64,000 nucleotides of DNA from Haliotis rufescens (GCF_023055435.1 NW_025964223.1:55614001-55678000), one strand, 5' to 3'. Shown: positions 9,071-63,576, counted from the stretch's first letter. Translations and numbers: made by a program. The notes: generated by a model from the sequence alone, not told the origin.

Positions 9071-9141
9071 AGACGTCAGTCGGTGCGCTCTCCTGAATGC
9101 GTGCGTGTATTTAACTGCAGCTTTGTATATCACATCTAACG
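9071..9141 (+). promoter_or_regulatory. Putative gene A core promoter and short non-coding exon 1
   Basis: CRE-like AGACGTCA 9071-9078, TATA-like TATTTAA ~9108-9114, donor G|GTATGT at 9141/9142. Matches the layout of paralogs C, D and E, but the exon would be very short. Confidence 0.4.
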
Positions 9142-9383
9142 GTATGTATAACACCATGTACTATTTAACATAGGCGAACCTGTTTCAGAACTACACACTT
9201 AACACAATGAAATGTCATTGATTATTATTTCAAACATTATTTGTCATCATTGAGTTTACGGACCAGTTCATATGGTTTCATCTAGAAGGCGTTCTTATTT
9301 GTTTGTTTATCAATACATTTAAAATATTACATTATTTTGTCTTAGGGAATAATGCAGAAATTATATATTTCAGTTCAATCAGG

Positions 9384-12108
9384 ATGAAAGGTCTGAGCAG
9401 CTGTCTGCCCATGTGTCTGTGTCTTGCTGTCTGTCTGCAGATTATCTGCGGGGAAGATACCCAGCAAGTTGACACGCCTCTGTCCCGACAAAAGAGGTTT
9501 GACTTTGACTTTGACAAAATATTAAAGGGTTTGAAGACGGCAGGCACCTTCGTAAAGACGGCCACCAACCTTCTTGGCCAAGGGAATTCAACGTTTGGAA
9601 GATTTATTAATAGGCTCCCCTTCTTGGATCTGCCAGATGCCAAAAGCATTTTAGGCCGATTTGATGACATGATGAAGAAAGAGGCCATGACGCCAGTTCA
9701 GATGGACCTCGCCCACCAGTTGATGGACGCCCTTAATCATACAATCTCGCTAAAGGAGCAGTTCGAGGAAAGTAGCGGTACGTTATTAACGAGAACACTC
9801 ACTTTCGTTACAGCGGACACGTCTATAGGGGCATTAAAATGCTGCTGGGATGTGGTTCTGGTGTATGGGGGAAGTCATTATGCTGAAGTGGACTGATCGC
9901 TAGCCCAGTAGGTATAGCTTGTGCCGAAGTGTCCGGCTCGATTCGATAGATACATGTACATGCCACTTCCAATGTGGTATTGCTGGCATATTGTATAGGC
10001 CATTCTCACTCAAATACAACTTACGTGGGAGGACACATGGTCGGCAACCCTATCTCAGTTTAACAGTTTCTCGTCTCATGAATGACAACTAGTAGTTATT
10101 TTTCTCGTACAATTTACTTTCAAGTACAGATTAAAGTACATTGAATGCGACTGTAAGTTTAAGATAAAATAATTGGTACTTGTCTGGTTGGACTTCATGC
10201 AAAACTATTTTTAAGTACAAAGCAATTATGTTTTACACACCGAATCAGTAGTTTAAACCCGGATACTCTCAGAGCAACCGTCTCTGATAGTTGAAGTCTA
10301 AAAGGCAATAGGTTCAAGTGAGAAAGAAGCTGGTGAGCGAACGCTAACCACATGGCCACATCCCCGACTGACACAAAGACGTTTATTGATGTCACAGGTG
10401 ATCGTGGATGACCCAGTGCAAAGTTGCGCCCCTTAGATATATATGTAGGGATCGTATGGTTATAGTCAGTAACGTAGCTGATATTGTATCCTTAAATTGC
10501 TCATGTCATCACCCACTAGATCGACTGATCCTGTCACGAGTACTTACAAGCTTCCGTGATAGGTGAAAGGTTGCGGCGAAGGCGTGAACACACTCAGTTG
10601 CTGTAAACCAGGAAGAAAACCATTTGTATTGATGGGGCGGTGGGGTAGTCTAGTGGTTAAAGCGTTTGCTCGTCACGCCGAAGACCCGGGTTCGATTCTC
10701 AACATGGGTACAAATTGTGAAGCCCATTTCTGGGCCCACTTGCACAAAGCGATCTTAGCGCTAAGAAGGTCGTAACTCCCATACTTTAACATAGGCTTAC
10801 GATAGTCTTAGCGCTAAGATCGCTTTGTGCAAGTGGACCCTGGTGTCATCCGCCGTGATATTGCTGGAATATTGCTAAAAGCGGCGTAAAGCCACACTTA
10901 CTCACTCACTTCTGTTGATTACAGAACATTGTTCTTGTACCTCAGGGGGCACGGGTGGCCCAGTCGTCCAAGGCGCCGCGATTCGCTGTGCAGAGTTGCG
11001 TCCCTTGGGCACGCCAGAAACCTATGATTGTGGGTTCGAATCCCGGTTCGCCCCGATTATGTTTAAAGGTTTGTCAGCACCATACCCGTGCTCGTGGGTT
11101 TCATCGAAGTGGTAAACGTCTGAGACCTGCATCACTTCGGGCTTTCCTCCCACACGCCGTGATTTAACTGGAATATTGTTCAAAGCGGCGTTAAACCCAA
11201 CTCACTCACTCATTCACATTCTTGTACCTCAACATGTTCTTGACCATGTCGTATTATTCCATTTCCTGTTCTTGTAAATGCAACAGTACTCTTCTTGTTC
11301 AGTTTCTGCTCCTGTTCTATTTTGTTCTTGTTGACCTCCTGATTCAAGAGCCTGTTTCCCCGCTGTCTTTCTTGTTTACTTTCACACTGTTCTTGGTCTC
11401 TTTCCTGCTCTTGTTCTTGACCTTGATCTTTTTGTTTCTGATTCTGTTGTACCTCCTCTCGCTCTAAGTCGTAGACTACATGCTATTTGTATATATTTGT
11501 TTATCGTCTTCAGGTCAGAAACAATTCGATTTGGTCAGTCTGTTGGCGGGACTAAGGACTGCCGGCACTGTGACAAAGACCATCACCAACGTCCTCGGCT
11601 TCAGAAACTCCGCTTTCGGAAGGTTCGTCAACCAGGTGCCTTTCTTGGACGTACCTGATGCCAAGAACGTCCTTGAACATGTGGAGAACATGATGAAGAC
11701 AGAAAAGATGTCAGAGGTCAAGATGGACCACGCCCATCAGCTGATGGAGGCTCTGGAATACTCCATCCAGATGAAGGAACAACTAGGAGAGGGCAGTGGT
11801 AAGTTCTCTTTCAACCAGGTGTAACTTAAATATTGTCCAAGAAGGAGTTAAACCCACTCAGGAGTAATTGATTGGCCTAAAGAGATTATCGAACTTTGTT
11901 GTCTATAGGAACTTTTGGTTAGAAAGTAGTCTTGCAGTCAGAGAGTTAAATTACGCAGCAAGCTTTAAATGAATATCTGCTGATGAGTTTACTATTTGTT
12001 TAAATAAATTCGTGCATGGGTTTGTGTGTTTCAGGTTCGTCAACATTGCTGCAGACATCGACCTTGATGATGCTGCCGGTCATGTGTGCAGTGAAATTTA
12101 CCATATAA
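9384..12108 (+). CDS. Gene A, join(9384..9777,11514..11798,12035..12108), 250-aa precursor: signal peptide, RQKR site, two helical domains, GPI-signal-like tail
   Basis: Acceptor tttcag at 9373, then MKGLSSCLPMCLCLAVCLQIICG...LSRQKR|FDFDFDKILKGLKT. Phase-1 donors at 9778 (GTACGT) and 11799 (GTAAGT); acceptors at 11513 and 12034. Last exon GSSTLLQTSTLMMLPVMCAVKFTI*. Total 753 nt in frame; AATAAA at 12284. Confidence 0.85.
10633..10910 (+). mobile_element. SINE family 2 interrupted by a MITE
   Basis: Family-2 head and tail flank the insertion at 10733-10839. Confidence 0.85.
10733..10839. mobile_element. 107-bp MITE, PIF/Harbinger-like
   Basis: ~34-bp TIR ggcccacttgcacaaagcgatcttagcgctaaga and 3-bp TSD CTG (10730-10732/10840-10842) in the SINE target ttctggtgtc. 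Confidence 0.85.
10945..11218 (+). mobile_element. SINE family 1, full length
   Basis: 13-bp TSD TTCTTGTACCTCA (10932-10944/11219-11231). Confidence 0.92.
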
Positions 12109-12539
12109 ATGTGTGGACAAGCATGTTGCCGGGGACTAATTGCTCATGATCAAATTCTCTTTGAGTTGCGTCCCCTCATCTGTGCCAGGATCGGCTTGTC
12201 GATTCACGGAAGAGCTCCTATTATTATCCTCGCCACCATATCTTATAGTAATCGTCTCGGTGTCCGCGCTCTGATATAATTGAAATAAAACTATTTCTCA
12301 AACGTTGTACTTGTTTAATTCACTATATCACAACTGCCACAGGGTGTGCTGGGGGCAGTGTCGACCCTCACTGTGAGCGCTAGCCCAGTGCCTGGCCTCT
12401 GCGTGTGTACGCTCTCTACTAGTGAATGAGTAGGTGAGTGTTCTTTAACACCCTAGTCAGCAATAGTCCAACTGTACCTTTAAGTAACCGTGCGTGCGTG
12501 TGTGCGTGCTTGCGTGCGTGCGTGCGTGCGTGCGTGTTT

Positions 12540-12742
12540 TGTACCTTGGGTGCGCCAGAAACCTATGATCTTGGATTCGCCCAACTTGTTTCTAGGTTTG
12601 TCAGCACCACACCCGTGCTCGTGGGTTTTACCGAGGTGGTAAACGCCTGAAACCTGCACAAACAACACCGGGTTTCCTCCCACGTTAAGATGACACATTT
12701 AGCGGCGCTGTAAGTGACGTTTAACCCAACTCACTCACTCAC
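12540..12742 (+). mobile_element. SINE family 1, 5'-truncated
   Basis: ccttgggtgcgccagaaacctatgat...ttcctcccac...aactcactcactca. Confidence 0.8.
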
Positions 12743-12780
12743 ACGTCGTAGGGGTAAGACTACACTCCGTCAACCAAAAG

Positions 12781-12908
12781 NNNNNNNNNNNNNNNNNNNN
12801 NNNNNNNNNNNNNNNNNNNNNNNNNNNNNNNNNNNNNNNNNNNNNNNNNNNNNNNNNNNNNNNNNNNNNNNNNNNNNNNNNNNNNNNNNNNNNNNNNNNN
12901 NNNNNNNN
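12781..12908. other. Assembly gap (other gaps at 19794-19936, 47144-47272, 53200-53518)
   Basis: Runs of N. Confidence 1.
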
Positions 12909-13169
12909 CTAGCCCACAGTGATAGCATAAAGAAGTTTAACATGAATATTCAACTCAAAGTATACTGACTCCGAGTCGACAAGAAAGATGTACCAGTGTA
13001 TGTATACGTAGCACTTCACACAGCAATCTGTGTGTGGAATCTGTCTAAACCGGACTCACTTGAGAATGGAGGTCAAGTCTGGTTTAGACAGCAGTCCGTA
13101 TTATGCGGATCGATAGGAAGTATCTCAAAGGGAATCTTTGACATTGATGCCAGTAAAAATCAGATGGGA

Positions 13170-13320
13170 TAATGTAAATGCAAATTTAACGTAAATGGAA
13201 ATGTAACTTTGACGTAAATTTAATGTAAATGTAAATTTAATGTATATTTAATGTTAATGTAAATTTAATGTAAATTCAATGAAAATGTAAATTTAATGTA
13301 TATTTAATGTAAATGTAAAA
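13170..13320. repeat. AT-rich tandem repeat (aatgta/aattta hexamer variants)
   Basis: taatgtaaatgtaaattt repeated imperfectly. Confidence 0.8.
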
Positions 13321-14848: not shown

Positions 14849-15348
14849 TATGTTTGTCCAGGATTTATGTGTCAGATGGCGGTTATATTTCACGAAAAGG
14901 GGTCTTAAATGGATTTGACATTTGAAGTCCCCGTGTCAAGGAGCGAAAGTTGAAGATTTATTTAGTAACGCTTAGAGCACTAAGTAGAACGGCAGGATGT
15001 GAAATATCAAAAGCCATTTATTCTCAATTCGGGATTTTGTTTGTTTGTTCATTCTTTAAGGTTGATTGATGATTGAACTTAAACCACATCTTCATATTAT
15101 TTCCAATTATTGATCGGTGTTCATTATTTTGTATCAACGAAACTGAACATTCAACAGTTCAAATATTCTTGTAGGGGAGACAGTTAATCGTTGAACTATA
15201 ATAAAATATGTTGACCATGCTGTACTACATAAATGTACGTTTGTCCATTTGGAAATCGAATTCTAAAATCTAAAACTTTACGTATTACTATTTCTTGAAA
15301 TGTTTTTACACATTTGATTAAGTTCTACCTGTTTTTTACTGAGAACTT

Positions 15349-15998
15349 TAGGAAACCCAAAGACTGTAGCACTCATAGCACAGTCTAATGTGAAGATTAG
15401 GAAACTGAAGACTGTAGCACTCATAGCACAGTCTAATGTGAAGATTAGGAAACTGAAGACTGTAGCACTCATAGCACAGTCTAATGTGAAGATTAGGAAA
15501 CTGAAGACTGTAGCACTCATGGCACAGTCTAATGTGAAGATTGGGAAACTGAAGACTGTAACACTCATGGCACAGTCTAATGTGAAGATTAGGAAACCCA
15601 AAGACTGTAGCACTCATAGCACAGTCTAATGTGAAGATTAGAAACTGAAGACTGTAGCACTCATAGCACAGTCTAATGTGAAGATTAGAAACTGAAGACT
15701 GTAGCACTCATAGCACAGTCTAATGTGAAGATTAGGAAACCCAAAGACTGTAGCACTCATAGCACAGTCTAATGTGAAGATTAGGAAACTAAAGACTATA
15801 GCGTTCCTAGCACAGTCTAATGTGAAGATTAAGAAACTAAAGACTGTTGCACTCATAGCACAGTCTAATGTGGAGATTAGGAAACTAAAGACTATAGCAT
15901 TCCTAGCACAGTCTAATGTGAAGATTAGGAAACAAAAGACTATAGCACTCATGGCATAGTCTAATGTGAAGATTAGGAAACTAAAGACTATAGCACTC
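15349..15998. repeat. Minisatellite, 48-bp unit x~13.5
   Basis: Unit aggaaactgaagactgtagcactcatagcacagtctaatgtgaagatt, with an internal inverted pair AGACTGT/ACAGTCT. Confidence 0.95.
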
Positions 15999-16584
15999 AG
16001 GGGGTCAGGGGTGTGGGGTGAGGGGTGGTGAGTTTTCGGAAGCATTTCCTAAGTTCACTCTTCGTCTCTGTGACCACGTCACGCTTGCCCTCAGGTCTTG
16101 GTGATCCTGGGTCAGAATTGGTCCCCTGGACACTTCTGAATTCACATTTAACTTCATGCCACAACCTCATCGGATAAAAACTTGTTCAACGACCCTCTGC
16201 GATTATCATATTAATAGGTTACTTTTTCATACTCTGAATCATCTCCTAATCCCAAACTATTTGTGTATTAGCGGAATATTGTGTCTGAGATGTATCGATT
16301 GATCGAACTATCGATTTATCTCCATTGTCAACGCTCCGACAATACATCGATGACAAATACAAATGTCAACAGTTAAGATCGATGCCGCCCCACACAATCG
16401 ATACTATCAATAGACGTATACAAATAATGTAAATCATAAACATAAGTTATGGCCAGAAAACCAAAGGTTGATATTATTAACCACATACCACGTGGGTTCG
16501 GTACGACGACACGCAACCAACCAAGTCGCAGAACCGTATGTTATCGCATGATGAATAAACTTCTTATGAAATTGTTAATTCTCT

Positions 16585-16840: not shown

Positions 16841-17407
16841 TTTATTTCTCTATTGCATTATTTAAAAATTATCGGTTTAAAATACATGTAGAACTATTTA
16901 TAATGACTTCAGTTCAGGGAGGGGCAGCAGCCACTTTGTTATCCCCTTGGAAATTTGAGTGGTGACGAATGACGCACTAGCTGCTATTGTTATAGACGCA
17001 TCCGGGCACTTCTCATCAACGAGGTTGAAGTCAAATTGTGAAGTGGTTAAGTAATCAAGTGAACAGGGAAGGTAATTCAGCCATACTTCTCTCTTATCCA
17101 ACCCCTCGACGAGCGTGATTGAGTGAGTTTGACGCCGTTTTGAACAGTATATTAATAACATCAAGTCGTGTCAGCTTAATGTAGGAGGAAAGCTCGAAAG
17201 GATGCATTTCTAAGACGTTTACCACTTTGATCAAACCCACGGGCACTGGCACGGTGCTGACAAACTTACAAACATAATCAGCGATCACAGGTTTCTTGAA
17301 GCAACACTGCACAGCGAATTGTTGCGCCAAAGACGACTGGGGCTACCGAATCTATTCTATTCTATTCTATATAACTCCAAAGAAAATAAGGATCTCCTGA
17401 TAAAGTG

Positions 17408-17665
17408 TGTTTGTTGTTTAACGCCGCACTCAGCCATCTTCCAGCTATATGACGGCGATATGTAAATAGTCAAGTCTGGACAAGACAATCCAGTGATTAA
17501 CATCATGAGCATCTATCCACGCAATTGGGATCGATGATATGCATCAACCAAGTCAGCGAGCCTGACCACCTGATCTCGTTAGTCGCCCCTTACAACAAAC
17601 ATAGTCGCCTATTGCGGCAAACACCGGTTGCTGAAGACCTATTCTACACCGGATCTTCACGGGTT
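17408..17665 (-). mobile_element. SINE-like family 3
   Basis: Matches the copy at 49055-49321. Confidence 0.85.
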
Positions 17666-19280: not shown

Positions 19281-19374
19281 ACTGTGTGATATTTAATAAA
19301 ATCAATGGTATATCCATTCTGTGTATTGTCATTTCTTGTGCATATAATACCATAATATTTTCAGTGTCAGCGCG

Positions 19375-20415
19375 ATGAAAGGTCAGCAGGTATTCGTCTG
19401 GCAATATTTCTGCATGTCATCACCGCAGATTCCAGACAATCTGCAGACAAAGCTCTGTCGCGACCGGGAAGATTTGACTTTCGTTCTCTACTCCGTGGGT
19501 TGAAGTCTGGCGGCTCTCTCGTTAAGGCTATCACCAACATACTAGGATTGGGGGACACGGACTTTGGTACGTTCATCAACAGTTTACCCTTCTTGGATCT
19601 TCCTGCCAGCCATCATGCGCTTGCCCACTTTGATGACTTGATGAAGAGAGACAGGAACATGACGGAGATTCAGAAGGCCCGTGTGGAGAAGCTGATGGAG
19701 AAGCTGCAATACAGCATGGAGATGAAGACAGAGCTCGGTACTTGCGATAACGGTAAGGCGCTGTTCTTCCTCCTCCATCTCACAATAAGTGATNNNNNNN
19801 NNNNNNNNNNNNNNNNNNNNNNNNNNNNNNNNNNNNNNNNNNNNNNNNNNNNNNNNNNNNNNNNNNNNNNNNNNNNNNNNNNNNNNNNNNNNNNNNNNNN
19901 NNNNNNNNNNNNNNNNNNNNNNNNNNNNNNNNNNNNCCCTTACCTACATAATAGCATATCCAGCAATGGAGTAGTGTTATTGGATAAACAATAATTGAAA
20001 TTGATATTATCTAGCGACATCAATCCTTTCCATATTTATAAGAAATATCTGACAAAAGCCGATTCCGACTGTATTTAGACCATGTGTAAACTTGATCCTG
20101 ACCGAAGTGTCCGATCCTGAGATCTTAATATTTGTTTGATAAATAGACATTAACTGTAGGTTTTTAATGTCAAGCAATATTACTATAAAGGTCATAAAGG
20201 TTATATTATCATATGTATTATTATAGTCCCGTTTTTGTTATTTCTTGGAGTTCCGTGTCGTGATGTATGGGAATAATGCTTAAAGCGGAGTAAAATCATC
20301 CCAAACAGCCACACTTACTGATAATGTTTTGTCAGTGGTTTCAGGGGCCACGGCGTCAACGCTGCCGATGACTAGTCTGATGTTGTCGGTCATCTATGCA
20401 GTAGTCTCCATCTAG
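19375..20415 (+). pseudogene. Gene B, join(19375..19752,20345..20415): single-domain paralog of A with a frameshift in the signal peptide (pseudogene, null allele or assembly error)
   Basis: ATG AAA GGT matches gene A, but the homologous frame LAIFLHVITADSRQSADKALSRPGR|FDFRSLLRGLKSGG...LPFLDLP is shifted, and the joined length is 449 nt. Donor 19753 GTAAGG and last exon GATASTLPMTSLMLSVIYAVVSI* are intact. Confidence 0.75.
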
Positions 20416-20923: not shown

Positions 20924-21211
20924 GTGAGTGAGTTCGTGAGTGAGTTGGGTTTAACGCCGCTTTTAACAGTATTACAGTTATATCGCGGCGTGTCCGCTTA
21001 ATGTGGGAGGAAAGCCCGAAGTGATGCAGGTCTCAGACGTTTACCACTTCGGTGAAAGCCACTAGCACGGGTATGGTGCTGACAAACCTAGAAACATAAT
21101 CGGGGTGAACCGGGATTCGAACCCACAATCAGAGGTCTCTGGCGTGTCCAAGGGACGCAACTCTGCAAAGCGAATCGCGGCGCCTTAGATGACTGGGCCA
21201 CCCGTGCCCCC
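20924..21211 (-). mobile_element. SINE family 1
   Basis: Near-identical to 7384-7662. Confidence 0.9.
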
Positions 21212-24589: not shown

Positions 24590-24671
24590 GTAAGCGTTTC
24601 TGTTAAAAATGATATAACATTGTTAAAATATGTCAATAGTTTGCATAGCATGTTGGAAAGCAGTTATTCAT

Positions 24672-24920
24672 TTATTTGTTTGTTGTTTAACGCCGCACTC
24701 AGCAATATTCCAGCTACATGACGGCGATCTGTGAATAATCAAGTCTGGACCAGACAGTACAGTGATTGACATCATGATCCACGCAATTGGGATCGATGAC
24801 ATGCATCAACCAAGTCCGCGAGCCTGACCACCTGATCCCGTTAGTCGCCTTTTACGACAAGCATAGTCGCCATTTACGGCAAGTATCGGTTGGTGAAGAC
24901 CTATTCTACCCCGGATCTTC
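24672..24920 (-). mobile_element. SINE-like family 3 in gene C intron 1
   Basis: Matches family 3; absent from gene D intron 1. Confidence 0.85.
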
Positions 24921-25522
24921 ATTTACAGATACTTACTTAAACTAAAAATAAATACTCTCGTTAAAACATTCTTGAAAATACCCGCCTGCAAATACCGCCC
25001 GAGACGTTATATGTGTTTGGCAATATCATTGCTTCGGTCTTCAACAAATTTAGAACACGAGGAGCCTAGTCGTCTAAGACACGGGACTTGCGTCACTTAG
25101 AACTATGCCTGGATCCTAGGATCGTGGGTTAAAATATCAGATTCACCGTGATCGTGAGTCTTGCTTTGTAAGCAACATAACGTGCTCGTGGTTCAGCACG
25201 TGGTAATTAAACGTCATCACTTTGTGATGTAACCGAAGTACTGTTCAAAGCAGCATTAAACCAAGTCCCAGTGATAGCGATAGTATGCATGTTTCATGAA
25301 TCAACAAATTAAAATTGGTTGGTATCGTCCTTCAGCAGGGACAGCAGCAAATGCCGTCGATATTTCCCGATTTAAAACACTAATTCGAACCTTATTTTTT
25401 GAGCTTGCAAACTTGGAATGAACTGTTTACTAGTTACACTGCATGATAAATATATATTTATTAAAATGCATTTATAAGGCGAAATGCATGTGTTATTCCC
25501 ATCCTCTTAATTCCAAAGAGAA

Positions 25523-27089: not shown

Positions 27090-28503
27090 ATGCAGTCCTC
27101 CATCGCTCTCCTGTGCCTCGTTGTCCTGGTGTGCGTGCACTCCAGCGTGACCGACACCCTGGACACCCTGGACACCCAGGACACCCACCTGTCACGTCAT
27201 AGACGGGTGAGGTCTGTGGGTGACATCGTGGACGGACTGACCACCAAGTTCAGTAAATATCTGTCATCTGTTTTCGACGTGGACGAGGACGACTTCAAGG
27301 ACATCCTGAAGGCGCTGGGGAAACTGAAGTTGGCGGTACTGAAGGCACTCCTGAATAAATTCTTTGACTTGAAGGACAAGCACCACGATTTTGGAAGCGC
27401 AGAAAATTTCCAGAGAGTTTCCCAAATGATGGAATCCTTGGAGGCAGATATTCAACAGCAGGAGGCAACCAGCGGGGTCACCCAGGACACCCAACTGTCC
27501 CGCCCTGTGGATGGCATCGTGAATGGACTGACCACCAAGTTCAGTAAATATCTGTCATCTGTTTTCGACCTGGACGAGGACGACTTCAAGGACATCCTCA
27601 AGGCGCTGGGGAAACTGAAGTTGGCGGTACTGAAGGCACTCCTGAATAAATTCTTTGACTTGAAGGACAAGCACCACGATTTTGGAAGCGCAGAAAATTT
27701 CCAGAGAGTGTCCCAAATGATGGAATCCTTGGAAGCAGATATTCAACAGCAGGAGGCAACCAGCGGTGTCACTCAGGACACCCAACTGTCCCGCCCTGTG
27801 GATGGCATCGTGGACGGACTGACCACCAAGTTCAGTAAATATCTGTCATCTGTTTTCGACGTGGACGAGGACGACTTCAAGGACATCCTGAAGGCGCTGG
27901 GGAAACTGAAGTTGGCGGTACTGAAGGCACTCCTGAATAAATTCTTTGACTTGAAGGACAAGCACCACGATTTTGGAAGCGCAGAAAATTTCCAGAGAGT
28001 TTCCCAAATGATGGAATCCTTGGAAGCAGATATTCAACAGCAGGAGGCATCCAGTGGTGAGTGTGTTGTACTTTAGTGCGGCAGTTTTACCGTTATATAT
28101 TGATTAATTGAATAAATTGAAAAATATTAATTGGATAATACAGACACAAAATATACAATAAAAGCATTTCTACATGATGAGCGTTTGGCATGTCAACGTT
28201 GGTTGAGACAGCTTATTTACAGCAAATATGCATCAATATAACAAATGAATTAACAATCGTTGTAACTAGTAACCACTTATGTCAAGAGAATTCACCATAA
28301 GATTAACCTGGGGTTTTTTAACATGAACCATGAACATTCATGGTAGAAAATATATTTGAACTATGCACATTGTCATCAGATTAACATTATTGACTTGATA
28401 TATGATGTGTTTTTGTCTAATTTCAGGGGCACCTGCAGCTTACGTTACCATGACGTCATTGACAATTCCACTGCTGCCAGTGATAGCTAAAGTTTTAAAC
28501 TGA
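27090..28503 (+). CDS. Gene C, join(27090..28056,28427..28503), 347-aa precursor: signal peptide, RHRRVR site, three 97-aa helical repeats, GPI-signal-like tail
   Basis: ttcag|aaacATG; MQSSIALLCLVVLVCVHS; 291-bp internal repeat x3; donor G|GTGAGT at 28057; last exon GAPAAYVTMTSLTIPLLPVIAKVLN*; 1044 nt in frame; AATAAA at 28549. Confidence 0.9.
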
Positions 28504-29340
28504 CCTGTGAGGAATATGTTATATTCATTTGTGTGTTGATGTCAGGGAAATAAAAATTCGTTTTTTTAAACAAGTCTATGTGTTTTTCTTCTGGTGCTAG
28601 AGAAATACAAATTTATGTATTCAATGAACCACGTGAATGAGTTCAGTTTAGCTTAAGACAGTTTGAACAGTTGTTCAGTTATATCACAGTGTATCAACTT
28701 GATATGGGAAGTAGAACTTTGGTTAAACCTACGGGCATCTATTGGGTGCTGACAAACCTGGAAACGTTATCAGGGTGCATCTGGAATTCGAACCCACGAC
28801 TATAGTATTCTAGCCTGCCTAGGGGATGCAGTTCTGCACAGTGCATTTTGGCGCTTCAGACGACGGTTCCTACTGCATGTACACATGATGTTGAAGGCGT
28901 TGTCCGAAATGGGACTGATAGCATAGAGGAGTATATCACAGCACATCAAACGCTCAACTCAAACATCGTGACACTGTAATTTGACAATAACTGGATATCC
29001 CATGTTATATATCGCAAATATTTCACACAATGTATATTTATACACATACTGTAAATAATCGAGGGTGGGATAGATAACCTAGTGATTGATATAGTGAGCA
29101 TCGTCGTCGGTGTACGATGACACACAATCAACCAGGACACCCAGCCTGACCCTCCGAAATATTTGGTCGCCAATAACGACCATCCTAAGTGGGATAGATA
29201 ATCTAGTGATTGATATAGTGAGCAACGTAGTTGGTGTACGATGACACACAATCAACCAGGACACCTAGCCTGACCCTCCGAAACATTTGGTCGCCAATTA
29301 CGACCATCCTAGGTTACTGGGGACATATCATTCTATCACA

Positions 29341-30259
29341 TAATTCCTGCATGGAGGACAATCGGGCGCTCCCCTTTACCAGGGGGGATCTTGCGCTGTG
29401 GCTCTCTGGTATCTGGGTGAGACCATTGGAAAGACGCTGTGTGGCAGGCGTTAACCCAGGTTTCGTCCAAATAGACAGGTTCATAGCCTTCTTCTCGTTT
29501 CTTTTTAATAGTGCGCAAATAATTGATACGCAAACGCGAATGATATCTGGTCGTTCACACATTGCTAGTTTCGACCTTTTCGTCTTTTTGTACTGATATC
29601 CAAATTTGGAAAGGAGTTTACAAATGGTCCATTTGGAAATATCAAAGTCATGCTCTGTAAGGAGAATCTGTTTTAGTTTTCGCATTGAAATAAATTCATT
29701 TTCTCGTGTTAACCGCCGAATCACGTCCCTGACAACTTTCTTATCAAAGGAATCTAACTTTAATTTCCTATCCTGTTTTGAGATGCCCCCTAAGGGATGT
29801 GCAGGGGAGCATGTGTTTTTATGAGAGTTCAAAAGCTTAACTACGGTTTGTTTGGGAAGCCGTAACGCATGAATTGTTCTTTTCGTGTACTTTGAAATGT
29901 CAAAGAAGGGCGAACGTCTTTCACTTTAAGCCTTAAAGTATTCAAATATTTTAACAACGAAACCTTTCGCATCAGCAGAAAGATGCTTGCGCTGAGACAT
30001 CATGAAATCTAATGCTAACACCGTATGCGTGCGTGCGTGATTCCCGTGCAACCTTTCGAGTCGAACAGGTCTGGTTGTTGATGAAATATAGTGATAGCTA
30101 AATAGACAGATTTTTTATTCATGCACCGATTGTCTTTAAATGTAATATCCAGTTATGTATGACTGTTTAATAATCTAATACCAACTTTGACTGGAGTAGG
30201 TCCAATAGTTTTTCAGATATTGTAGTAAACGTCGGTACCTTAAATTAACTTCCAGACTA
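29341..30259 (-). mobile_element. IS630-Tc1-mariner transposon relic (5' part, disrupted transposase)
   Basis: HTH-like LKQILLTEHDFDISKWTICKLLSKFGYQYKK and catalytic VYLDETWVN..GKGERPIVLHAG in shifted frames. TIR-like end tagtctggaagttaatttaagg next to TA. Confidence 0.8.
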
Positions 30260-31412: not shown

Positions 31413-31697
31413 GGGGGTACGGGTGGCCCAGTTGCCCATTCGCCGCGATTCGATGTGCAGAGTTGCGTCCCTTGGGCACGCCAGAAACCTATGATTGTGG
31501 GTTCGAATCCCGGTTCGCCCCGATTATGTTCCTAGGTTTGTCAGTACCACACCCGTGCTCGTGGGTTTTACCGAACTGGCAAAAGTCTGAGACCTGCATC
31601 ACTTCGGGCTTTCCTACCACATTAAGCCGACACGCCGTGATATAACTGTAAAGCTGTTAAATGCGGCGTTAAACCCAACTCACTCACTCACTCACTC
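31413..31697 (+). mobile_element. SINE family 1
   Basis: Family-1 match; flanking ctgtaggatcatgt is duplicated. Confidence 0.88.
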
Positions 31698-35225: not shown

Positions 35226-36593
35226 ATGCAATCCTCCATCGCCCTCCTGTGCCTCGTTGTCCTGGTGTGCGTGCACTCCACCGTGACCGACACCCTAGAC
35301 ACCCAGGACACCCACCTGTCACGTCATAGACGGGTGAGGTCTGTGGGTGACATCGTGGACGGACTGACAACCAAGTTCGGTAAATATCTGTCATCTGTTT
35401 TCGACGTGGACGAGGACGACTTCAAGGACATCCTCAAGGCGCTGGGGAAACTGAAGTTGGCGGTACTGAAGGCACTCCTGAATAAATTCTTTGACTTGAA
35501 GGACAAACACCACGATTTTGGAAGCGCAGAAAATTTCCAGAGAGTGTCCCAAATGATGGAATCCTTGGAGGCGGATATTCAACAGCAGGAGACAACCAGC
35601 GGTGTCACTCAGGACACCCAACTGTCCCGCCCTGTGGATGGCATCGTGGACGGACTGACCACCAAGTTCAGTAAATATCTGTCATCTGTTTTCGACGTGG
35701 ACGAGGACGACTTCAAGGACATCCTGAAGGCGCTGGGGAAACTGAAGTTGGCGGTACTGAAGGCACTCCTGAATAAATTCTTTGACTTGAAGGACAAGCA
35801 CCACGATTTTGGAAGCGCAGAAAATTTCCAGAGAGTGTCCCAAATGATGGAAACGTTGGAGGCGGACATTCAACAGCAGGAGGCATCCAGCGGTGAGTGT
35901 TATGTAGTTCAGTCTGGAAGTATTACCGCTATTAAACTATTCCAAAAAATATCGATTGGATAATACAGATACAAACATATTACGAAACCATTTCTATAAT
36001 TGTTTGCATGTCAACGTTGTTTGAGACAGCCTATTTCTATACCAGATGACATTAACGGATGTTTGTAAGCAAATATGCATCAATATATCAAATTATTAAT
36101 AATCGTAGCAAGTAACCACTTATATTAGGAGCCTATAAGATTAACATGAGGTGTTTTATGACATGAGTGAGTGAGTGAGTGAGTTAATGCTTTACGTCAT
36201 CACATCGGCAATATTTCAGCCATATCGTGACGAGTTATGACATGAAGATGCATGGTAGAAAATAAGCTTTAACTATGCATATTGGTAACAGTATTAACTT
36301 GTTCTTTTGTTTGGCTGTTGTGTTTCTTGGTTTGTTGTTTAACTTCGCAATATTCCAGCTGTATGACGGCGTCTGTAAATAATCGCGCCTGAACCAGACA
36401 ATCCAATGATTGCCAAGATGAGCATCGATCCACGTCAATCTAGGGTTGCTGTAGACCTGATTCTTCAAGAGTACACTAATTTGGAATGATATATGATGGG
36501 TTTTGTCTTATTTCAGGGGCGCCTGCAGCTTACGTTACCATGACGTCATTGACAATTCCACTGCTGCCAGTGATAGCTAAAGTTTTAAACTGA
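35226..36593 (+). CDS. Gene D, join(35226..35892,36517..36593), 247-aa precursor, two-repeat paralog of C
   Basis: Same signal peptide, RHRRVR site and last exon (GAPAAYVTMTSLTIPLLPVIAKVLN*). Donor 35893, acceptor 36516; 744 nt in frame. Confidence 0.9.
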
Positions 36594-38643: not shown

Positions 38644-38907
38644 GGGGGGCACGTCTGTGCGCCGTGATTCGCTCTGCAGAGTTGCGTCCCTTGGGCACGC
38701 CAGAAACCTATGATTGTGGGTTCGAATCCCGGTTCGCCCCGATTATGTTACTAGGTTCGTCAGCACCATACCCGTGCTCTTGGGTTTCACCGAAGTGGTA
38801 AACGTCTGAGACCTGCATCACTTCGAGCTTTCCTCCCACATTAAGCTGACACGCCGCGATATAACTGGAATACTGTTAAAAGTGGCGTTAAACCCAACTC
38901 ACTCACT
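38644..38907 (+). mobile_element. SINE family 1
   Basis: TSD CCTAGACTGAA (38633-38643/38908-38918). Confidence 0.9.
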
Positions 38908-39289
38908 CCTAGACTGAAAAAAGTCCCCGAAACACTGCAAATGGAAACACATAAAGTTTCCTGGTCGAAAACCGTAAGGGGGGAATATTCATGTGGGAAA
39001 ATATTCCAGTGTTAGTAACACACTGGCTGTCGAAATAAAATCCTTGGCAAACATTTCCACTGGATCCGAGAAAGGATCTCCAGGGGGACTACATATCCTA
39101 TTACACAAACTAAAGGTCCAAAGCACAACGATGATACCCGTATCAAATACATCCCCATCGAATAACCATTTCTTGTTTGCTTCATTTCTAGACATCATCA
39201 AACATGGATGTGTACTTTCTCTTGCCCGGCAGTTTATATTGTTTAACATAGTTCCTCACACACACGCATGCACAATTACTGTGATATGT

Positions 39290-52600: not shown

Positions 52601-53737
52601 TATATATAAAGGATATCGGCCACATTCATCATATACAATAACACTTGATGCTTTGGGACCAACGCTGAGACATTTCTTGCAAGCAATCAAATTGACTGTT
52701 TCAATCTTTTTAAATATGATGCCAAGGTTTGATTGAGGTATATATGTTTAGCAACAACGAGGATTATTCAGATATGTATTATTTGTAAAAGAACGGGAGA
52801 GTTGCGTCCCTTTTGTGTGGCAGGATCCGAGGTTTCTCACCTCAGATTCGCCCTGATTATGATCCTTGGTTGGTCAGCACCATACCCGTGATACAATATC
52901 GCGAAGTGTATGTAATTTGCTAATTAATAAGGTGTTTTATAAACGACTGTCATTTGGCAACATAATGTATCGGTCAAAACAAATATAGATGTAGAGGACT
53001 TAAGAAAATAACGGACGTATTTGTTACGACTAGTCGACTAAAATGAGGATTGGGTGGATGCAGTGTGTGACCCGACAGATTGTATGTCACCATACACAGA
53101 CGCCGTTGATCGTTGCTCTTGCTGTCAACCACTCGTGTGTCTGCATGGCCAGACTGGATTAGTATATAGATGACATGATACAGACGCGATATTGCTGACN
53201 NNNNNNNNNNNNNNNNNNNNNNNNNNNNNNNNNNNNNNNNNNNNNNNNNNNNNNNNNNNNNNNNNNNNNNNNNNNNNNNNNNNNNNNNNNNNNNNNNNNN
53301 NNNNNNNNNNNNNNNNNNNNNNNNNNNNNNNNNNNNNNNNNNNNNNNNNNNNNNNNNNNNNNNNNNNNNNNNNNNNNNNNNNNNNNNNNNNNNNNNNNNN
53401 NNNNNNNNNNNNNNNNNNNNNNNNNNNNNNNNNNNNNNNNNNNNNNNNNNNNNNNNNNNNNNNNNNNNNNNNNNNNNNNNNNNNNNNNNNNNNNNNNNNN
53501 NNNNNNNNNNNNNNNNNNAGTACTGCTATGTAATATCAGGCAACAAATACGTCATTTTTATCCTAACTGTGTCAGTGGCGGGTGCTGCCGGTAGAGCAGA
53601 ACACCCTTTACGCGAACACCTGGTGTCATCACTGATTTTCAGTGATCCATTCATATAGTTTTCACCGCTATTTTGCCTTCTACCCCCAACAGAATCTGTT
53701 TCGTCGGATAAGCGAGACATATACTTACACCACGTAC

Positions 53738-55418: not shown

Positions 55419-55493
55419 GTGTGAGGTGAGGTGAGGTGGAATGGGGTTTAACGTCGCGTCCATGATTATTTCACTTATATAGCGACGTGCATG

Positions 55494-55524
<31 letters not shown>

Positions 55525-58252: not shown

Positions 58253-58284
58253 TATACGTTAATGATTTGACATCTTTTTTACAG

Positions 58285-58529
58285 CGTGTGTGTGTGGCTG
58301 CTTGTACACTGAGATACCATGCCGCAGTTTAACATGAATACCCCAATCAGACACAGTATACTGACTCCGAGCTGACCAGCCCTTGTTTTAGCCCCCTAAT
58401 GCCGAGCGCCAGACAGGGTAACAACAAGTACCATCATTTAACGTCTTTTGGTATGACGCGGCCCGGGATCGAACCCCGGACCTTCCGCTCTCCAGGCGGA
58501 CGGTCTACCACTAGACCACGGAGGCGGTC
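58285..58529 (-). mobile_element. SINE family 4
   Basis: Family-4 match. Confidence 0.85.
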
Positions 58530-59128: not shown

Positions 59129-59219
59129 TATAAAGAAGGGGTCAGTTTATCGTCCGTCAGTCTGTCATGAAGGTAACTTACAGATAACTCTCACACACGA
59201 AGCTGCGCCGATCACAAAG
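59129..59219 (+). promoter_or_regulatory. Putative gene G TATA box and non-coding exon 1
   Basis: TATAAA 59129-59134; exon contains gaagctgcgccgatc (compare gene E gaagctgcaccgatc); donor AAAG|GTAGGA at 59219/59220. Confidence 0.55.
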
Positions 59220-60920
59220 GTAGGAGACTTCTGCGTTCTTTATTGGAGTGCAGTTTCTATTATCCTGTCTCGGTGTGCTAAAACTTTCATTCATTCATTC
59301 ATTCATTCATTCATTCATTCATTCACTCCGTTTTATATTTCCCCATAAGGACAGTATTATAGAGTATGTTAAAGTGTCCATGATACACATTGTGCCTACA
59401 CCTACACCTTGTGGGTTACACACAACAAAATGTTTTCCCATAGACTTCTGTAGTAACGTTATATTTTTTTTTAAATAACTAAGCATTCAACAGCTATTAC
59501 CTGTATGTGTGTGCACAGTTTGGCCTTAGAGCAGCAATAAAAAAATAAAAAATGACCAGCTTAGCCAGCTCCTTTTCCGAGTACAGGAAGCTAAATACAC
59601 CATCCCCAGTTTCGCACCAAATGTCACCTACTTGAAAGTAGCTGTGGTCACATTCAGCATAAGTCATCATGTTGAAATAGACAGTACTAAATATAGAAAA
59701 ACATGGTCACTTTTAATAACTGGATGGATGTACATTTGAAAGACATAAAAATCTTACAGAATATCCTCCAATCACAGCCTGCAGATATCTCTCGATCTGC
59801 ACTGAAAACCGCACTGTCCAAACTAGTTCTGATTTGGTGTAGTAGCCGTCAGAATGCTTGTAAATATGAAATATTAACTGCCGAGAATAACCAGTCTCGA
59901 TTATCCTCCCGAACAGATTCCATTGGGTGTAATATGCAAAATAGCGGTGAGAACAACATGAATGGGTCACTGAAAACCTTTCATCCGACCAATCAGACCG
60001 TCGCTTAGGAGATTGCGAAAATGAAAGTCCGAATGTAATCATACGTATACGACCTCGAAAATGTTAATGCGCAACATTCCGAACGACAGTTACCGGCTTT
60101 ACGAGTTTTGGGTAATAATAATCCTGTATGTGGGTGCTAAAGGTCTCATTGCCGATATTTTCATATTTTTTTATATTATCCAATTTCTTTGAATAATTTA
60201 TGTTCATCAATGTTTACTAGTTCTACATCCAAGTCTACCTCTGTGTAAGATCTGTGTGTTAAAGCATGATCTCAGTTTAGAGACTCACAAAAGCCAAATA
60301 TGAAACCTTCCAGGAATTACTAACGACTTTATTTTATATCAATGTAATTCTGTGGTCCTTACACATCTGTCTCCAAAGGCGCTTAAACCATTCATTCACT
60401 CTCCAAAGGCCCCGGGATCATTCGTTCACGAGGGACAGATTATCCGTAATTAAGTGCTTCGGGCAGCGTACTCTCTATATATTACTTATTGTCATGTTAG
60501 GATAGAAAATGTAGAATTACGCCCGAAATATCAACACTACCACGTCAGTGAAGTTAACATATTGTTATGATGATGTAATGTTATCCATTTGTGCGGTCAT
60601 GAACAATGACCCCATTTCGTACTATCCTCAATAACGACTGCAATGTGACGTCATATCGCTTCAACTGACCAATAAGCATTGAGAACAGCTAAAATGTGCA
60701 TCTGCTAAAACTGGATATCTGTTCCCTACTCACACACATGAGTCCCAAAGAGGGGCATTGGTTTGGTTTGTTGGTAAGGCCGCACTCAGTTATATGACGG
60801 TGGTCTGTAAATAATCGAGTCTGAACCAGACAATCCAGTGATTAATATCATGAGCATCGATCTCCACCTCAAACCTCCGTGGGTTGCCTTTGAGCGGCAC
60901 ATCCTGCTCGCGCTTGTACG

Positions 60921-61186
60921 TTTGTTTGTTTGTTGTTTAACGCCGCACTCAGCAATATTCCACCTATATGACGGCGGTCTGTAAATAATCGAGTGTGGAC
61001 CAAGACAATCCAGTGATTGACATCATGAGCATCTATACACGCAATTGGGATACGATGACATGCATCAACCAAGTCAGCGAGCCTGACCACCCGATCCCGT
61101 TAGTCGCCTTTTACGACAAGCATAGTCACCTTTTACGGCAAGCATGGGTTGCTGAAGACCTATTAGAACCCGGATCTTCACGGGTC
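60921..61186 (-). mobile_element. SINE-like family 3 (partial copy also at 60762-60860)
   Basis: Family match. Confidence 0.88.
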
Positions 61187-61336
61187 AGCAAAGGGGCAGG
61201 TCAGCCGAAACTGCTGAAGCAGTAGGCGCCTCTTAAACACCTAAAGCAGCAGCAACAACACTCTTCTCATAGGGGTAATGTTATCCATTCTGGGTTGGTG
61301 GGTCCATTCGGTTCCATGTTATCTGGCGATACGTGG

Positions 61337-61483
61337 GTGAGTGAGTTTGGTTTTACGCCGTTTTTAGCAATATTCCAGCAATATCAGGAATGGGCCTCAC
61401 ACATTGTACCCATATTGGGAATCAAACCCGGGTCTTCGGCGTGACGAGCGAACGCTTTAACCACTAGGCTACCCGACCACCCC
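61337..61483 (-). mobile_element. SINE family 2
   Basis: Family match. Confidence 0.85.
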
Positions 61484-61949
61484 TCTAACGATACGAAAAT
61501 GAATAGATCTATGGTTTGACGATAAGGAACCATTTTTATTTTCAGGGGGTTGGTTAGGCCTTAAAATGCAATGAGACTTCTTTGACACGAGGTTTCACTG
61601 TCCAGGGGATATTTCTACGTGAATTGTGTAATCATCACAGCTGGTATTAACATTTTTTAACAATATCTTTATATTGTATTTCATATTGTCGCCAAACGTT
61701 TATGTTGCATTGCTCTGTCATATGCGATGTTGTGATGTAAATACATGGGGAAACATAAGCAGCGCAATATTTAATCGTATCCTGTATTACTTTTCTGACG
61801 AAACGCTACTATTTTGGCCTAAAGAGTGACAAACTCATACTGTAATACAGACACCAAAATTTAGTATCTAATAAAATGTTTTTTACTCTTCTATGGCAAT
61901 AATTATTGGATTATACTTTCAGTTGTTTTCTCTACTTCTTAGCAACGTT

Positions 61950-62243
61950 AGGGGCAGGAGATGCCCAGTCGTCTGAGGCACCGCAATTCGCTGTGCAGAG
62001 TTGCGTCCCCTGGGTATACCAGAAACCTATAATTGCAGGTGCGAATCCTGGTCAGCCCCGAATATGTTTTGAGAGCACCATACCCGTGCTCGTGGGTTTC
62101 CCCAAAGTTGTAGACTAACGAGACTCACCACTTCGGGTCTTCCTCCCACATTAAGCTGACACGCCGTGCTAAAACTGGAATACTTTGTTACAGCGGCGTT
62201 AAACCCAACTCACTCACTCACTCACTCACTCACTCACTCACTC
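61950..62243 (+). mobile_element. SINE family 1
   Basis: Family match with a long (ACTC)n tail. Confidence 0.85.
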
Positions 62244-62925
62244 TAAGCAACATAACTAGTGTAGGTCTCAGTACTGGACCGTCTGGAGACATGCACTGTT
62301 CTCATATCAACTTTTATCTCATTCTGTATTTTACTTTACAAATGATTACAAGAAACTTTGACGCGCTGACCATCGTGTCAACCCTGTGTCATCATTAACT
62401 CTTATTTTATTATTGTTGTTTCAATGCATTTGTTGCTTCAATTTCTATTTGGAATTATTACTTTTTCACATACGAGGACATTACATTATACATGCATATT
62501 ATTATTATTATTATTATTATGTACAGATTAAAATAAAAAATGCAGCAAAGAAGGTTTGGGTGATCCTGGCACTGTCAGGCTGGTTAGGCTCATCATCAGC
62601 TCAGGGCCCTTGCCCCCTCTACACACAGCCCAGACAGCGAATGGGAGTTCTCTGCATTACCCAGATTGTCAGAAGGGCTGTATTCCTGGTAGCAACCCCG
62701 GGTACTCTCCCAATGTCAGTCAGCAGATTGGGAGGTACCAAACCTAAGGCACCGAGAACAAATGGAGAATGGAACAAATTGGTACTTGGGATGCAAGCGT
62801 GACATTTCGAAAGCGAAGTCTGCATATTTGCCATGTTTTTCAATCACATTTGCGTCAAAAGGGACAGAAAACTCAATAACATAAATGATTTCATTGGATT
62901 TATCATTATTATTATTCCAGCAACC

Positions 62926-63576
62926 ATGGTGACCCTTTACTGCACATTGCTCCTCCTGACTCTGACGTCAACACAGGCCACAGGGACATATATGACGTCA
63001 AAGTCTGATGATGTCATCATCCCATCCACCAATGACGTCACAGAAACACAAACCGGCCCTGATGAGGACAGCAGAATACCCTTCCACCGAGACATCCGAT
63101 CTCCTAAAAGATTTCTACCCAGCGCAAGAAAAGTAATTAAAACACTTAAAGTTCCTTTGGTGAAAAACACTTCCATATACAAGAAAGCAACATCCCAAAG
63201 TAATTTCTTTCTGACAAGATTTCGAAATAGCGCCAAGAAAGTAAAATTTCAAAACAGATTGTCACACCTCTTCAGGGCCGCTAAAGCTGGGTCGAACACA
63301 GCACGACTGTCTCTGAGATCCTTGGTGCCAACCCTTCTGGGTTTCGGCACAGCAGGCGCTGGCCTTGCGACGGCCATTTCCCAGTTACTGACAGTTACGA
63401 GAGACCAACCCGCCCAGAAACTCCCCAGCGTGTCTCCTCTTCAGCCTCATGAGATAGAGTCCTTGTTGCAAGGACTCGGGGCACCTACTTCCGGCTCTGG
63501 CGCAACTGTCAGAAAGAATGCTGTATTCGTGACTATTCTGAGTGCATTCCTGTGCACAGTTGTTTATCATGACTGA
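62926..63576 (+). CDS. Gene G, single coding exon, 216-aa precursor: signal peptide, acidic pro-region, RDIR/PKR sites, highly cationic region, Gly/Ala-rich hydrophobic segment, GPI-signal-like tail
   Basis: ttccag|caaccATGG (acceptor plus Kozak context); MVTLYCTLLLLTLTSTQA; ends SGSGATVRKNAVFVTILSAFLCTVVYHD*. Confidence 0.82.
   Translation: MVTLYCTLLLLTLTSTQATGTYMTSKSDDVIIPSTNDVTETQTGPDEDSRIPFHRDIRSPKRFLPSARKVIKTLKVPLVKNTSIYKKATSQSNFFLTRFRNSAKKVKFQNRLSHLFRAAKAGSNTARLSLRSLVPTLLGFGTAGAGLATAISQLLTVTRDQPAQKLPSVSPLQPHEIESLLQGLGAPTSGSGATVRKNAVFVTILSAFLCTVVYHD

What the first reader, a model, noticed from the sequence alone, without database searches (positions are those of the whole stretch)
9071..63576. 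Seven-gene cluster of convertase-cleaved, GPI-signal-bearing amphipathic-helix precursors (candidate membrane-tethered lytic or defence system)
Seen in the sequence: genes A-G all read signal peptide, short polar/acidic pro-piece, R-X-X-R site, amphipathic or cationic helical region, small residues (S/G/N/A), then a ~20-30-aa hydrophobic C-terminus with no cytosolic tail. The sites are RQKR in A and F, RPGR in B, RRVR in C and D, RSRR in E, and RDIR/PKR in G. Established: signal + acidic pro + basic site + cationic amphipathic helix is the layout of linear antimicrobial/cytolytic peptide precursors such as dermaseptin/brevinin, and omega site + spacer + hydrophobic tail is the GPI-attachment signal. 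Inference: the combination would display a protease-activated membrane-active domain on the cell surface, or release it by GPI cleavage. I know no named family with this design. Epithelial/mucus defence, haemocyte killing and gamete membrane interaction are candidate roles.
Basis: partly seen in the sequence, partly recalled or inferred. Interest (0 to 1): 0.93.

Follow-up and report, generated by a model that had tools for sequence, protein, structure and literature searches.

The report
Abalone-only surface helical-bundle gene cluster
A red-abalone gene cluster encodes small secreted helical proteins, found only in abalones, that are probably lipid-anchored (GPI) to the cell surface; the genes are real and expressed, but nothing supports the proposed membrane-killing role.

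Summary
The window is Haliotis rufescens DNA. My exon models for six of the seven genes (A, C, D, E, F, G) match RefSeq "uncharacterized protein" models exactly. Spliced transcript contigs confirm the last-exon junctions of E and F. Gene B has all the parts, but its ATG is out of frame with the rest. No assembly gap touches a coding exon.

A to E, plus two paralogs about 90 kb upstream, form one family. It has one to three copies of a roughly 90-residue, cysteine-free domain predicted as a five-helix bundle. A profile search of 1.84 billion proteins finds it only in Haliotis. There is no Pfam, PDB-sequence or fold match. F and G are unrelated single-copy genes with the same layout.

All have a signal-peptide-like start, and a small-residue site followed by a 24 to 30-residue hydrophobic end. 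GPI anchoring is therefore likely, but no dedicated predictor was available. A furin-type or dibasic site precedes the domain in most members. It is missing in some orthologs, so cleavage is not obligatory.

The lytic or defence reading is unsupported. The helices are predicted to pack as a fold. Mature A, C, D and F are acidic. C and D are under purifying selection. Function and tissue remain unknown.

The parts
9384..9777 (+). Gene A exon 1: signal peptide, short polar pro-piece, RQKR site, helical domain 1. Ends in phase 1 inside a Gly codon.
   Evidence: Equals residues 1-131 of RefSeq LOC124125562 (P0004). AF2 gives helices 43-132.
11514..11798 (+). Gene A exon 2: second copy of the domain. 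It is a phase 1-1 cassette with no basic site.
   Evidence: Equals residues 133-226 of P0004. It is 56% identical to domain 1. The H. rubra ortholog P0005 has three domains.
12035..12108 (+). Gene A last exon: small-residue site plus a 23-residue hydrophobic tail and the stop codon (candidate GPI signal).
   Evidence: Equals residues 228-250 of P0004. The crude GPI rule is met. Tail pLDDT is about 28.
19362..19752 (+). Gene B main exon: domain ORF with an RPGR motif. The ATG at 19375 is out of frame with it, so this is a probable pseudogene or an assembly indel.
   Evidence: tblastn of the H. cracherodii ortholog P0007 puts residues 1-4 in frame +1 and residues 10-128 in frame +3, at 92% identity.
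20345..20415 (+). Gene B last exon (hydrophobic tail). The assembly gap 19794-19936 lies in the intron before it.
   Evidence: Matches P0007 residues 127-150 at 92% identity.
27090..28058 (+). Gene C exon 1: signal peptide, pro-piece, RHRRVR site and three tandem 97-residue domain copies.
   Evidence: Equals residues 1-322 of RefSeq LOC124127180 (P0014). The 291-nt repeat has 2.9 copies at 97% match.
28427..28503 (+). Gene C last exon (hydrophobic tail).
   Evidence: Equals residues 324-347 of P0014.
35226..35892 (+). Gene D exon 1: as in C, but with two domain copies.
   Evidence: Equals residues 1-222 of RefSeq LOC124127171 (P0013). dN/dS against C is 0.04-0.07.
36517..36593 (+). Gene D last exon (hydrophobic tail, identical in protein sequence to that of C).
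   Evidence: Equals residues 224-247 of P0013.
44830..45196 (+). Gene E exon 1: signal peptide, pro-piece, RSRR site and one domain.
   Evidence: 100% identical to RefSeq LOC124125550 (P0001). Transcript contigs cover it in four runs. The AF2 domain has pLDDT 71-87.
45550..45623 (+). Gene E last exon (hydrophobic tail).
   Evidence: A GT..AG joint from 45195/6 to 45549/50 is seen in four runs. One 741-nt contig spans both exons.
49371..49815 (-). Gene F exon 1: signal peptide, pro-piece of about 80 residues, RQKR site, then a conserved 48-residue region that begins with a hydrophobic stretch.
   Evidence: 100% identical to RefSeq LOC124127165 (P0020). The basic site and the region after it are conserved in four Haliotis species.
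48464..48555 (-). Gene F last exon (29-residue hydrophobic tail). The intron is at the same phase-1 position in a Gly codon as in A-E.
   Evidence: An 843-nt contig of run X3 joins 49370 to 48554. Equals residues 150-178 of P0020.
62926..63576 (+). Gene G, single exon: signal peptide, RDIR and PKR sites, a strongly cationic region (+16), a Gly/Ala-rich segment and a hydrophobic tail.
   Evidence: The exact sequence is in the protein collection as P0018. It is 93% identical to an H. cracherodii protein. It is single copy in the genome.

Best explanation
The window holds a tandem cluster of a gene family restricted to abalones (Haliotis). Genes A to E, with two more paralogs about 87-96 kb upstream, encode pre-pro-proteins with a common plan. 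Each has an ER signal peptide and a short polar pro-piece, which in most members ends at a furin-type or dibasic site. Then come one to three copies of a roughly 90-residue, cysteine-free five-helix-bundle domain. A separate last exon supplies a small-residue site ([S/N]-G-[A/S]), a spacer and a hydrophobic end. The most likely mechanism is that the last 24-25 residues are exchanged for a GPI anchor in the ER. In most members the pro-piece would then be trimmed by a convertase in the late secretory pathway. The mature product would be one to three folded helical beads tethered to the outer leaflet, acting as surface coat or recognition proteins rather than as pore-forming peptides. F and G are unrelated single-copy genes that share the layout, and F also shares the intron position.

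Shown: the genes, the splicing, the expression, the family limits, the purifying selection and the predicted helical fold.

Inferred: GPI anchoring, convertase cleavage and a surface role. Biological function and tissue are unknown.
For: Species and models. RefSeq H. rufescens proteins match the exon models of A, C, D, E, F and G exactly.

Expression. Spliced contigs cover E in four runs and F in one run.

Family limits.
- The domain profile hits nine domains in the window and two weaker paralogs on the same contig, and nothing else in the 1.33-Gb genome.
- In 1.84 billion representative proteins it finds only Haliotis proteins and one 685-nt NCBI record of unknown species.
- The Physella hit is an mTERF protein, so it is a false positive.

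No named relative. Pfam, PDB sequences, Foldseek, VIA-align (best Z 8.4, generic helical) and the Atlas all gave nothing.

Fold. AF2 gives five helices per domain at pLDDT 70-87 in two subfamilies. The pro-piece, linker and tail are all below 50.

GPI features.
- The tail is 24-30 residues long after the small-residue site in all members.
- The crude rule is met in 13 of 13 proteins, against 0 of 26 control ORFs and 2% of shuffled tails.
- The tails are conserved in character across four species.

Basic site. It is unique in each protein and always directly before the first helix.

Constraint. For C versus D, dN/dS is 0.04-0.07 at dS 0.12. Their exons are 95-97% identical, against 89-91% for the intron and 3' flank.
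Against: No dedicated GPI, signal-peptide or convertase predictor could be run, and there is no biochemical evidence.

The hydrophobic ends are only moderately hydrophobic (mean Kyte-Doolittle 1.3-1.9 over the last 15-20 residues) and several contain Pro. A weak membrane anchor or a removed C-terminal pro-peptide therefore remains possible.

The basic site is missing in the E orthologs of H. rubra and H. asinina and in the B ortholog of H. cracherodii. It is only a dibasic KR in the upstream paralogs and in G.

The AF2 alignments are shallow (12-15 rows), and for A only one of five models was confident.

The tissue of expression is unknown because run labels were coded.
Confidence: 0.6

Rival explanations
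1. One reading: these are membrane-tethered, protease-activated lytic or antimicrobial effectors. Convertase cleavage would arm an amphipathic or cationic helix that attacks target membranes, either while GPI-tethered or after release.
For: C, D and E carry one strongly amphipathic Lys/Leu-rich helix inside the domain. G is very cationic, with mature net charge +16 and pI 11.8. In F the conserved basic site is followed at once by a hydrophobic Ala/Ile/Gly-rich stretch, conserved in four species. An acidic pro-piece followed by a basic site recalls antimicrobial-peptide precursors (own knowledge).
Against: The mature parts of A-E are 85-281 residues and are predicted as packed helical bundles. 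Amphipathic helices are what any soluble bundle is made of. Mature A, C, D and F are acidic. No cleavage site flanks the cationic helix, and the internal repeats of C and D lack the site. The site is absent from some orthologs. There is no similarity to any known lytic family.
Confidence: 0.1
2. These are soluble secreted or matrix proteins (for example mucus, shell-matrix or signalling proteins). The hydrophobic C-terminus would not be a GPI signal. It would be a weak transmembrane anchor, a removed C-terminal pro-peptide or a lipid- or partner-binding segment.
For: The hydrophobic ends are short (12-20 residues), of moderate hydrophobicity and interrupted by Pro. Lineage-restricted, repeat-rich secreted proteins are common in mollusc mantle secretomes (abstracts of PMC5400390 and PMC4897951, seen but not read in full). 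C and D are Asp/Glu-rich, with sub-threshold EF-hand-like Pfam hits.
Against: Signal peptide, small-residue triplet, spacer and a terminal hydrophobic run with no residues beyond it are all kept in paralogs only 25% identical and in four species. That combination is the classical GPI signature. The EF-hand hits are far below Pfam cut-offs.
Confidence: 0.2
3. These are peptide-hormone, pheromone or cytokine-like precursors. The basic site would release a bioactive helical ligand. This fits F best, because its 48 residues after the site are its best conserved part.
For: In F, R-[Q/P]-K-R and the following region are nearly invariant in four species, while the pro-piece varies. The sites are dibasic or furin-type.
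Against: There are no amidation signals and no multiple flanked copies. The repeats of C and D are not separated by cleavage sites. A hydrophobic C-terminal tail is not a feature of neuropeptide precursors. The domain folds as a bundle of about 90 residues.
Confidence: 0.07

Closest known systems
GPI-anchored surface proteins that are also cut by furin-type convertases (repulsive guidance molecules, glypicans, mesothelin; Drosophila GPI-anchored FGF Branchless, PMC9203819, seen by title and abstract)
   Same: Signal peptide, a basic-site processing step and a C-terminal GPI-attachment signal occur in one precursor, giving a tethered extracellular product.
   Different: There is no sequence or fold relation. 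Here the domain is a 90-residue cysteine-free helical bundle found only in Haliotis. Both modifications are inferred, not shown.
Linear cationic antimicrobial-peptide precursors (dermaseptin, brevinin or cecropin type)
   Same: Signal peptide, a polar or acidic pro-piece, a basic cleavage site, then helical amphipathic sequence.
   Different: The mature part is 85-281 residues, is predicted to fold, and is mostly acidic. It carries a hydrophobic C-terminal tail. There is no homology.
Abalone sperm lysin and sp18 (helical-bundle fertilization proteins of Haliotis)
   Same: The same genus. Both are small, secreted, cysteine-poor helical bundles that differ strongly between species (own knowledge of lysin).
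   Different: No lysin structure appears among the Foldseek or VIA-align matches, and there is no sequence match in PDB. Lysin has no GPI-type tail (own knowledge). C and D are under purifying selection.
Exchangeable apolipoprotein or apolipophorin-III type amphipathic helix bundles
   Same: A cysteine-free bundle of amphipathic helices that could in principle open on a lipid surface.
   Different: There is no significant fold or sequence match. The Bombyx lipoprotein hit has Z 5.2, which is within the noise for helical models. The domain is smaller, and it carries a pro-piece and a GPI-type tail.

Membership tests
GPI-anchored proteins (C-terminal GPI-attachment signal) | N-terminal ER signal peptide | tested here: met
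   An uncharged hydrophobic run of 8-13 residues lies within the first 16 residues of all 13 proteins tested (crude rule). SignalP was not available.
GPI-anchored proteins (C-terminal GPI-attachment signal) | Small residues at omega, omega+1 and omega+2, a 5-11-residue spacer, then a terminal hydrophobic run with no cytosolic tail | tested here: met
   [S/N]-G-[A/S] lies at the exon junction, and 24-30 residues follow it. The rule is met in 13 of 13 proteins, against 0 of 26 control ORFs with both features and 44 of 2100 shuffled tails.
GPI-anchored proteins (C-terminal GPI-attachment signal) | Positive call by a trained predictor (NetGPI, PredGPI, big-PI), and PI-PLC release | not testable with these tools
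   No such predictor and no network were available in the sandbox. The release assay is bench work.
Proprotein-convertase (furin/PC) substrates | An R-x-[K/R]-R site, or a dibasic site, in an exposed segment | tested here: met
   There is one canonical site per protein in A, C, D, E and F, always in the low-pLDDT segment just before helix 1. The upstream paralogs and G have only KR.
Proprotein-convertase (furin/PC) substrates | The site is conserved among orthologs | tested here: inconclusive
   It is kept in A (3 of 3 species) and F (4 of 4). In E it is kept in H. rufescens and in organism B, where it reads RSKR. It is absent in E of H. rubra and H. asinina and in B of H. cracherodii.
Linear cationic amphipathic antimicrobial-peptide precursors | A short (about 10-50 residues) mature peptide with net positive charge | tested here: not met
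   The mature parts are 85-281 residues in A-E, with net charge -4, -14, -10 and +2 for A, C, D and E. F has 48 residues and is acidic (-2). Only G is cationic, and it has 129 residues.
Abalone lysin/sp18 family | Sequence or fold similarity to lysin | tested here: not met
   No lysin entry appears among the PDB sequence hits, the Foldseek hits or the VIA-align hits.
EF-hand calcium-binding proteins | A Pfam EF-hand match above the gathering score | tested here: not met
   Only sub-threshold hits in C and D: EF-hand_8 at 16.8 bits against a cut-off of 28, and EF-hand_6 at 15 bits against 25.

The most novel reading that the evidence does not exclude
A genus-specific set of GPI-tethered proteins that convertase cleavage makes membrane-active. 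Candidates are the Lys/Leu-rich helix of C, D and E, the hydrophobic new N-terminus of F, and the polycationic G. Such a set could serve as a surface-tethered effector or fusogen module in abalone defence or gamete-membrane interaction.
Probability: 0.08. Interest if true: 0.8.

Novelty: new variant of a known kind. Interest (0 to 1): 0.35.

Why it matters
The result defines an undescribed protein family restricted to Haliotis. It has a new helical domain, and the domain number is labile: two copies in A of H. rufescens against three in H. rubra, and three against two in the sister genes C and D. The family probably belongs to the abalone cell-surface (GPI) proteome. Abalones are a classic model for fast-evolving secreted recognition proteins, so a clustered, expressed, constrained surface family is a reasonable candidate for tissue-resolved expression and localisation studies. 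It does not show a new defence mechanism.

Tried and rejected
Searches that found no relative:
- Pfam on all exon products and orthologs gave nothing above cut-offs.
- PDB sequence searches with the two profiles and with G gave nothing.
- Foldseek and VIA-align on two AF2 models gave only generic helical matches.
- ESM Atlas searches for E and G gave nothing usable.

Homology of F and G to A-E was rejected. BLASTP and hhalign find nothing, although F shares the phase-1 intron in the Gly codon before the tail.

The Physella 828-residue hit of the profile search was rejected as an mTERF protein. A bacterial repeat protein (P0011) was rejected as a compositional hit.

Link to the abalone shell-matrix protein Hdh-SMP5 (PMC10741955): its cDNA is 685 bp, the same length as the record behind P0009. 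However, its 134-residue ORF and the published motif positions do not fit P0009. I treat this as coincidence, and it remains unverified.

Literature searches by locus names and by topic found no paper on these genes.

The run labels are coded, so no tissue could be named. Only one stretch could be laid, so C, D, A and G were not checked against reads.

Spliced products were taken only as RefSeq proteins returned by the searches, and exons were checked one by one.


Full report
**Origin and gene models**

The window is Haliotis rufescens (red abalone). Exon 1 of gene E is 100% identical to RefSeq LOC124125550. The window sits on a 63-Mb chromosome-scale contig.

I built exon models from the sequence and checked each exon on its own against the RefSeq proteins that the searches returned. 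For A, C, D, E, F and G every exon translation is a contiguous substring of P0004, P0014, P0013, P0001, P0020 and P0018. A single Gly bridges each junction. I did not build joined proteins myself.

All are named "uncharacterized protein" by their sources.

**Transcripts**

One call of read laying covered 44300-50000 with four runs that had been found through the C-D region.
- All four runs carry a GT..AG joint from 45195/6 to 45549/50 (gene E). One of them has a 741-nt contig with no mismatch on exon 1.
- Run X3, from a related species, has an 843-nt contig joining 49370 to 48554 (gene F).

In one study, runs hold very different shares of the C-D words (0.15, 0.05, 0.00). This hints at sample-specific expression, but the labels are coded.

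**Assembly gaps**

None touches coding sequence.
- 12781-12908 lies about 670 nt past A's stop codon.
- 47144-47272 and 53200-53518 are intergenic.
- 19794-19936 lies in B's last intron, between the donor at 19753 and the acceptor at 20344.
- The intact H. cracherodii ortholog P0007 joins the two B exons exactly as modelled.

**Gene B**

B's ATG (19375) and the next three codons are in one frame, and residues 10-128 are in another. This is a 4-nt shortfall relative to P0007. No H. rufescens protein for B turned up: the 90% cluster of P0007 has a single member. B is either a recent pseudogene or an assembly indel.

**One family plus two singletons**

- The domains of A (two), B, C (three), D (two) and E align over about 92 columns. 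A/B and C/D/E form two subfamilies, 23-25% identical to each other.
- A profile of these domains finds, in the whole 1.33-Gb genome, only the nine copies in the window and two weaker paralogs 87-96 kb upstream on the same contig (L010 = LOC124125590; L011).
- Against 1.84 billion representative proteins it finds only Haliotis proteins (H. rufescens, H. cracherodii, H. rubra, H. asinina) and one record of unknown species.
- A Physella hit is an mTERF protein, so it is a false positive.
- F and G show no similarity to A-E by BLASTP or profile comparison, and both are single copy.
- F does share the position and phase of the intron before its tail. G has no intron.

**The domain**

AlphaFold2 with the family alignment gives five helices per domain at pLDDT 70-87. 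It does so for E and for both domains of A (though only one of five models was confident). The pro-piece, inter-domain linker and C-terminal tail are all below 50.

Nothing gives a significant relative:
- Foldseek against PDB.
- VIA-align against 48,161 chains: best Z 8.4 on dynein stalk helices, below the tool's stated noise level for helical models.
- PDB sequence searches.
- Pfam.
- The ESM Atlas.

Abalone lysin does not appear in any list.

**The basic site**

Each protein has exactly one basic site, always directly before the first helix.
- Canonical R-x-[K/R]-R: A (three species), C and D, E of H. rufescens (RSKR in the related species of run X3), P0009, and F (four species).
- Dibasic KR only: the two upstream paralogs and G.
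- No site: E of H. rubra and H. asinina, and B of H. cracherodii.

Convertase trimming is therefore plausible for most members, but it cannot be essential to the family.

**The tail**

In all members the main exon ends in [S/N]-G, with the Gly codon split in phase 1. The last exon adds A or S, a polar spacer and a hydrophobic end. Exactly 24-30 residues follow the small-residue site.

I applied a crude rule set of my own, based on the classical description of GPI signals.
- It is met, together with a signal-peptide rule, by 13 of 13 proteins from four species.
- No control ORF (0 of 26) meets both rules.
- It is met by 2% of shuffled tails.

This is a heuristic, not a trained predictor. The tails are only moderately hydrophobic and several hold Pro. 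That speaks against a stable transmembrane helix, and it also leaves GPI anchoring unproven. I put GPI anchoring at about 0.65-0.7.

**Against the lytic reading**

- Mature net charges are A -4, C -14, D -10, E +2, F -2 and G +16.
- The Lys/Leu-rich helix of C, D and E sits inside a predicted bundle, flanked by acidic helices, with no cleavage sites around it.
- Amphipathic helices are expected of any small soluble bundle.

**Selection**

C and D are recent duplicates. Their exons are 95-97% identical, while the intron and 3' flank are 89-91% identical. Nei-Gojobori estimates between corresponding repeats give dS about 0.12 and dN/dS 0.04-0.07 (small counts, 13 synonymous against 3 non-synonymous changes). 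D against E gives 0.17. The domain is therefore constrained, not decaying.

Between more distant species the proteins differ strongly: E is 64-67% and F 57-60% identical to H. rubra and H. asinina. Domain number also changes: A has two domains here and three in H. rubra.

**Verdict**

Its functional claim of a lytic or defence system has no support. I searched locus names and topics and found no paper on these genes.

Noticed in passing
L010:1369-1788 and L011:1339-1746 (G000:C445:55517838-55518098 and 55527289-55527474, about 87-96 kb upstream of the window): Two more distant paralogs of the A-E family. Each has a signal peptide, a dibasic KR site and one domain. L010 is RefSeq LOC124125590 (P0010) and has a hydrophobic tail. 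I did not find the tail exon of L011 within the locus.
   Followed up: partly
window 19375-19400: Gene B's start codon is out of frame with the rest of its first exon, a 4-nt shortfall against the H. cracherodii ortholog. It is either a pseudogene or an assembly indel.
   Followed up: partly
window 39464-41071: A 42-nt minisatellite with 38 copies at 92% match. It produces long spurious ORFs in several frames on both strands, in a region of strong GC skew.
   Followed up: no
window 15348-15999 and 3630-4081: Tandem repeats of 48 nt (13.6 copies) and 74 nt (6.1 copies).
   Followed up: no
window 7384-7662, 10945-11217, 20936-21211, 31413-31697, 38659-38908, 61951-62225: Copies of a dispersed element of about 280 nt, 78-95% identical. 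A second repeat family lies at 17405-17664, 24671-24921, 49047-49323, 50966-51240 and 60920-61186. These are the places of very high contig depth in the laid runs.
   Followed up: no
window 330-1272 and 29314-29832 (minus strand): Transposase remnants: a MULE-domain ORF (E 1.3e-5, just under the Pfam cut-off) and a weak Tc3-type HTH match (E 8.7e-4).
   Followed up: partly
window 44936: In the related species of runs X2 and X3, the E basic site reads RSKR instead of RSRR. Five of the eight listed coding differences in E are non-synonymous.
   Followed up: partly
window 47507-48164 (minus strand): Run X3 contigs continue F's 3' end to about 47507, with a non-canonical 329-nt skip (47834 to 48164). 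This is probably an insertion difference between species rather than an intron.
   Followed up: no
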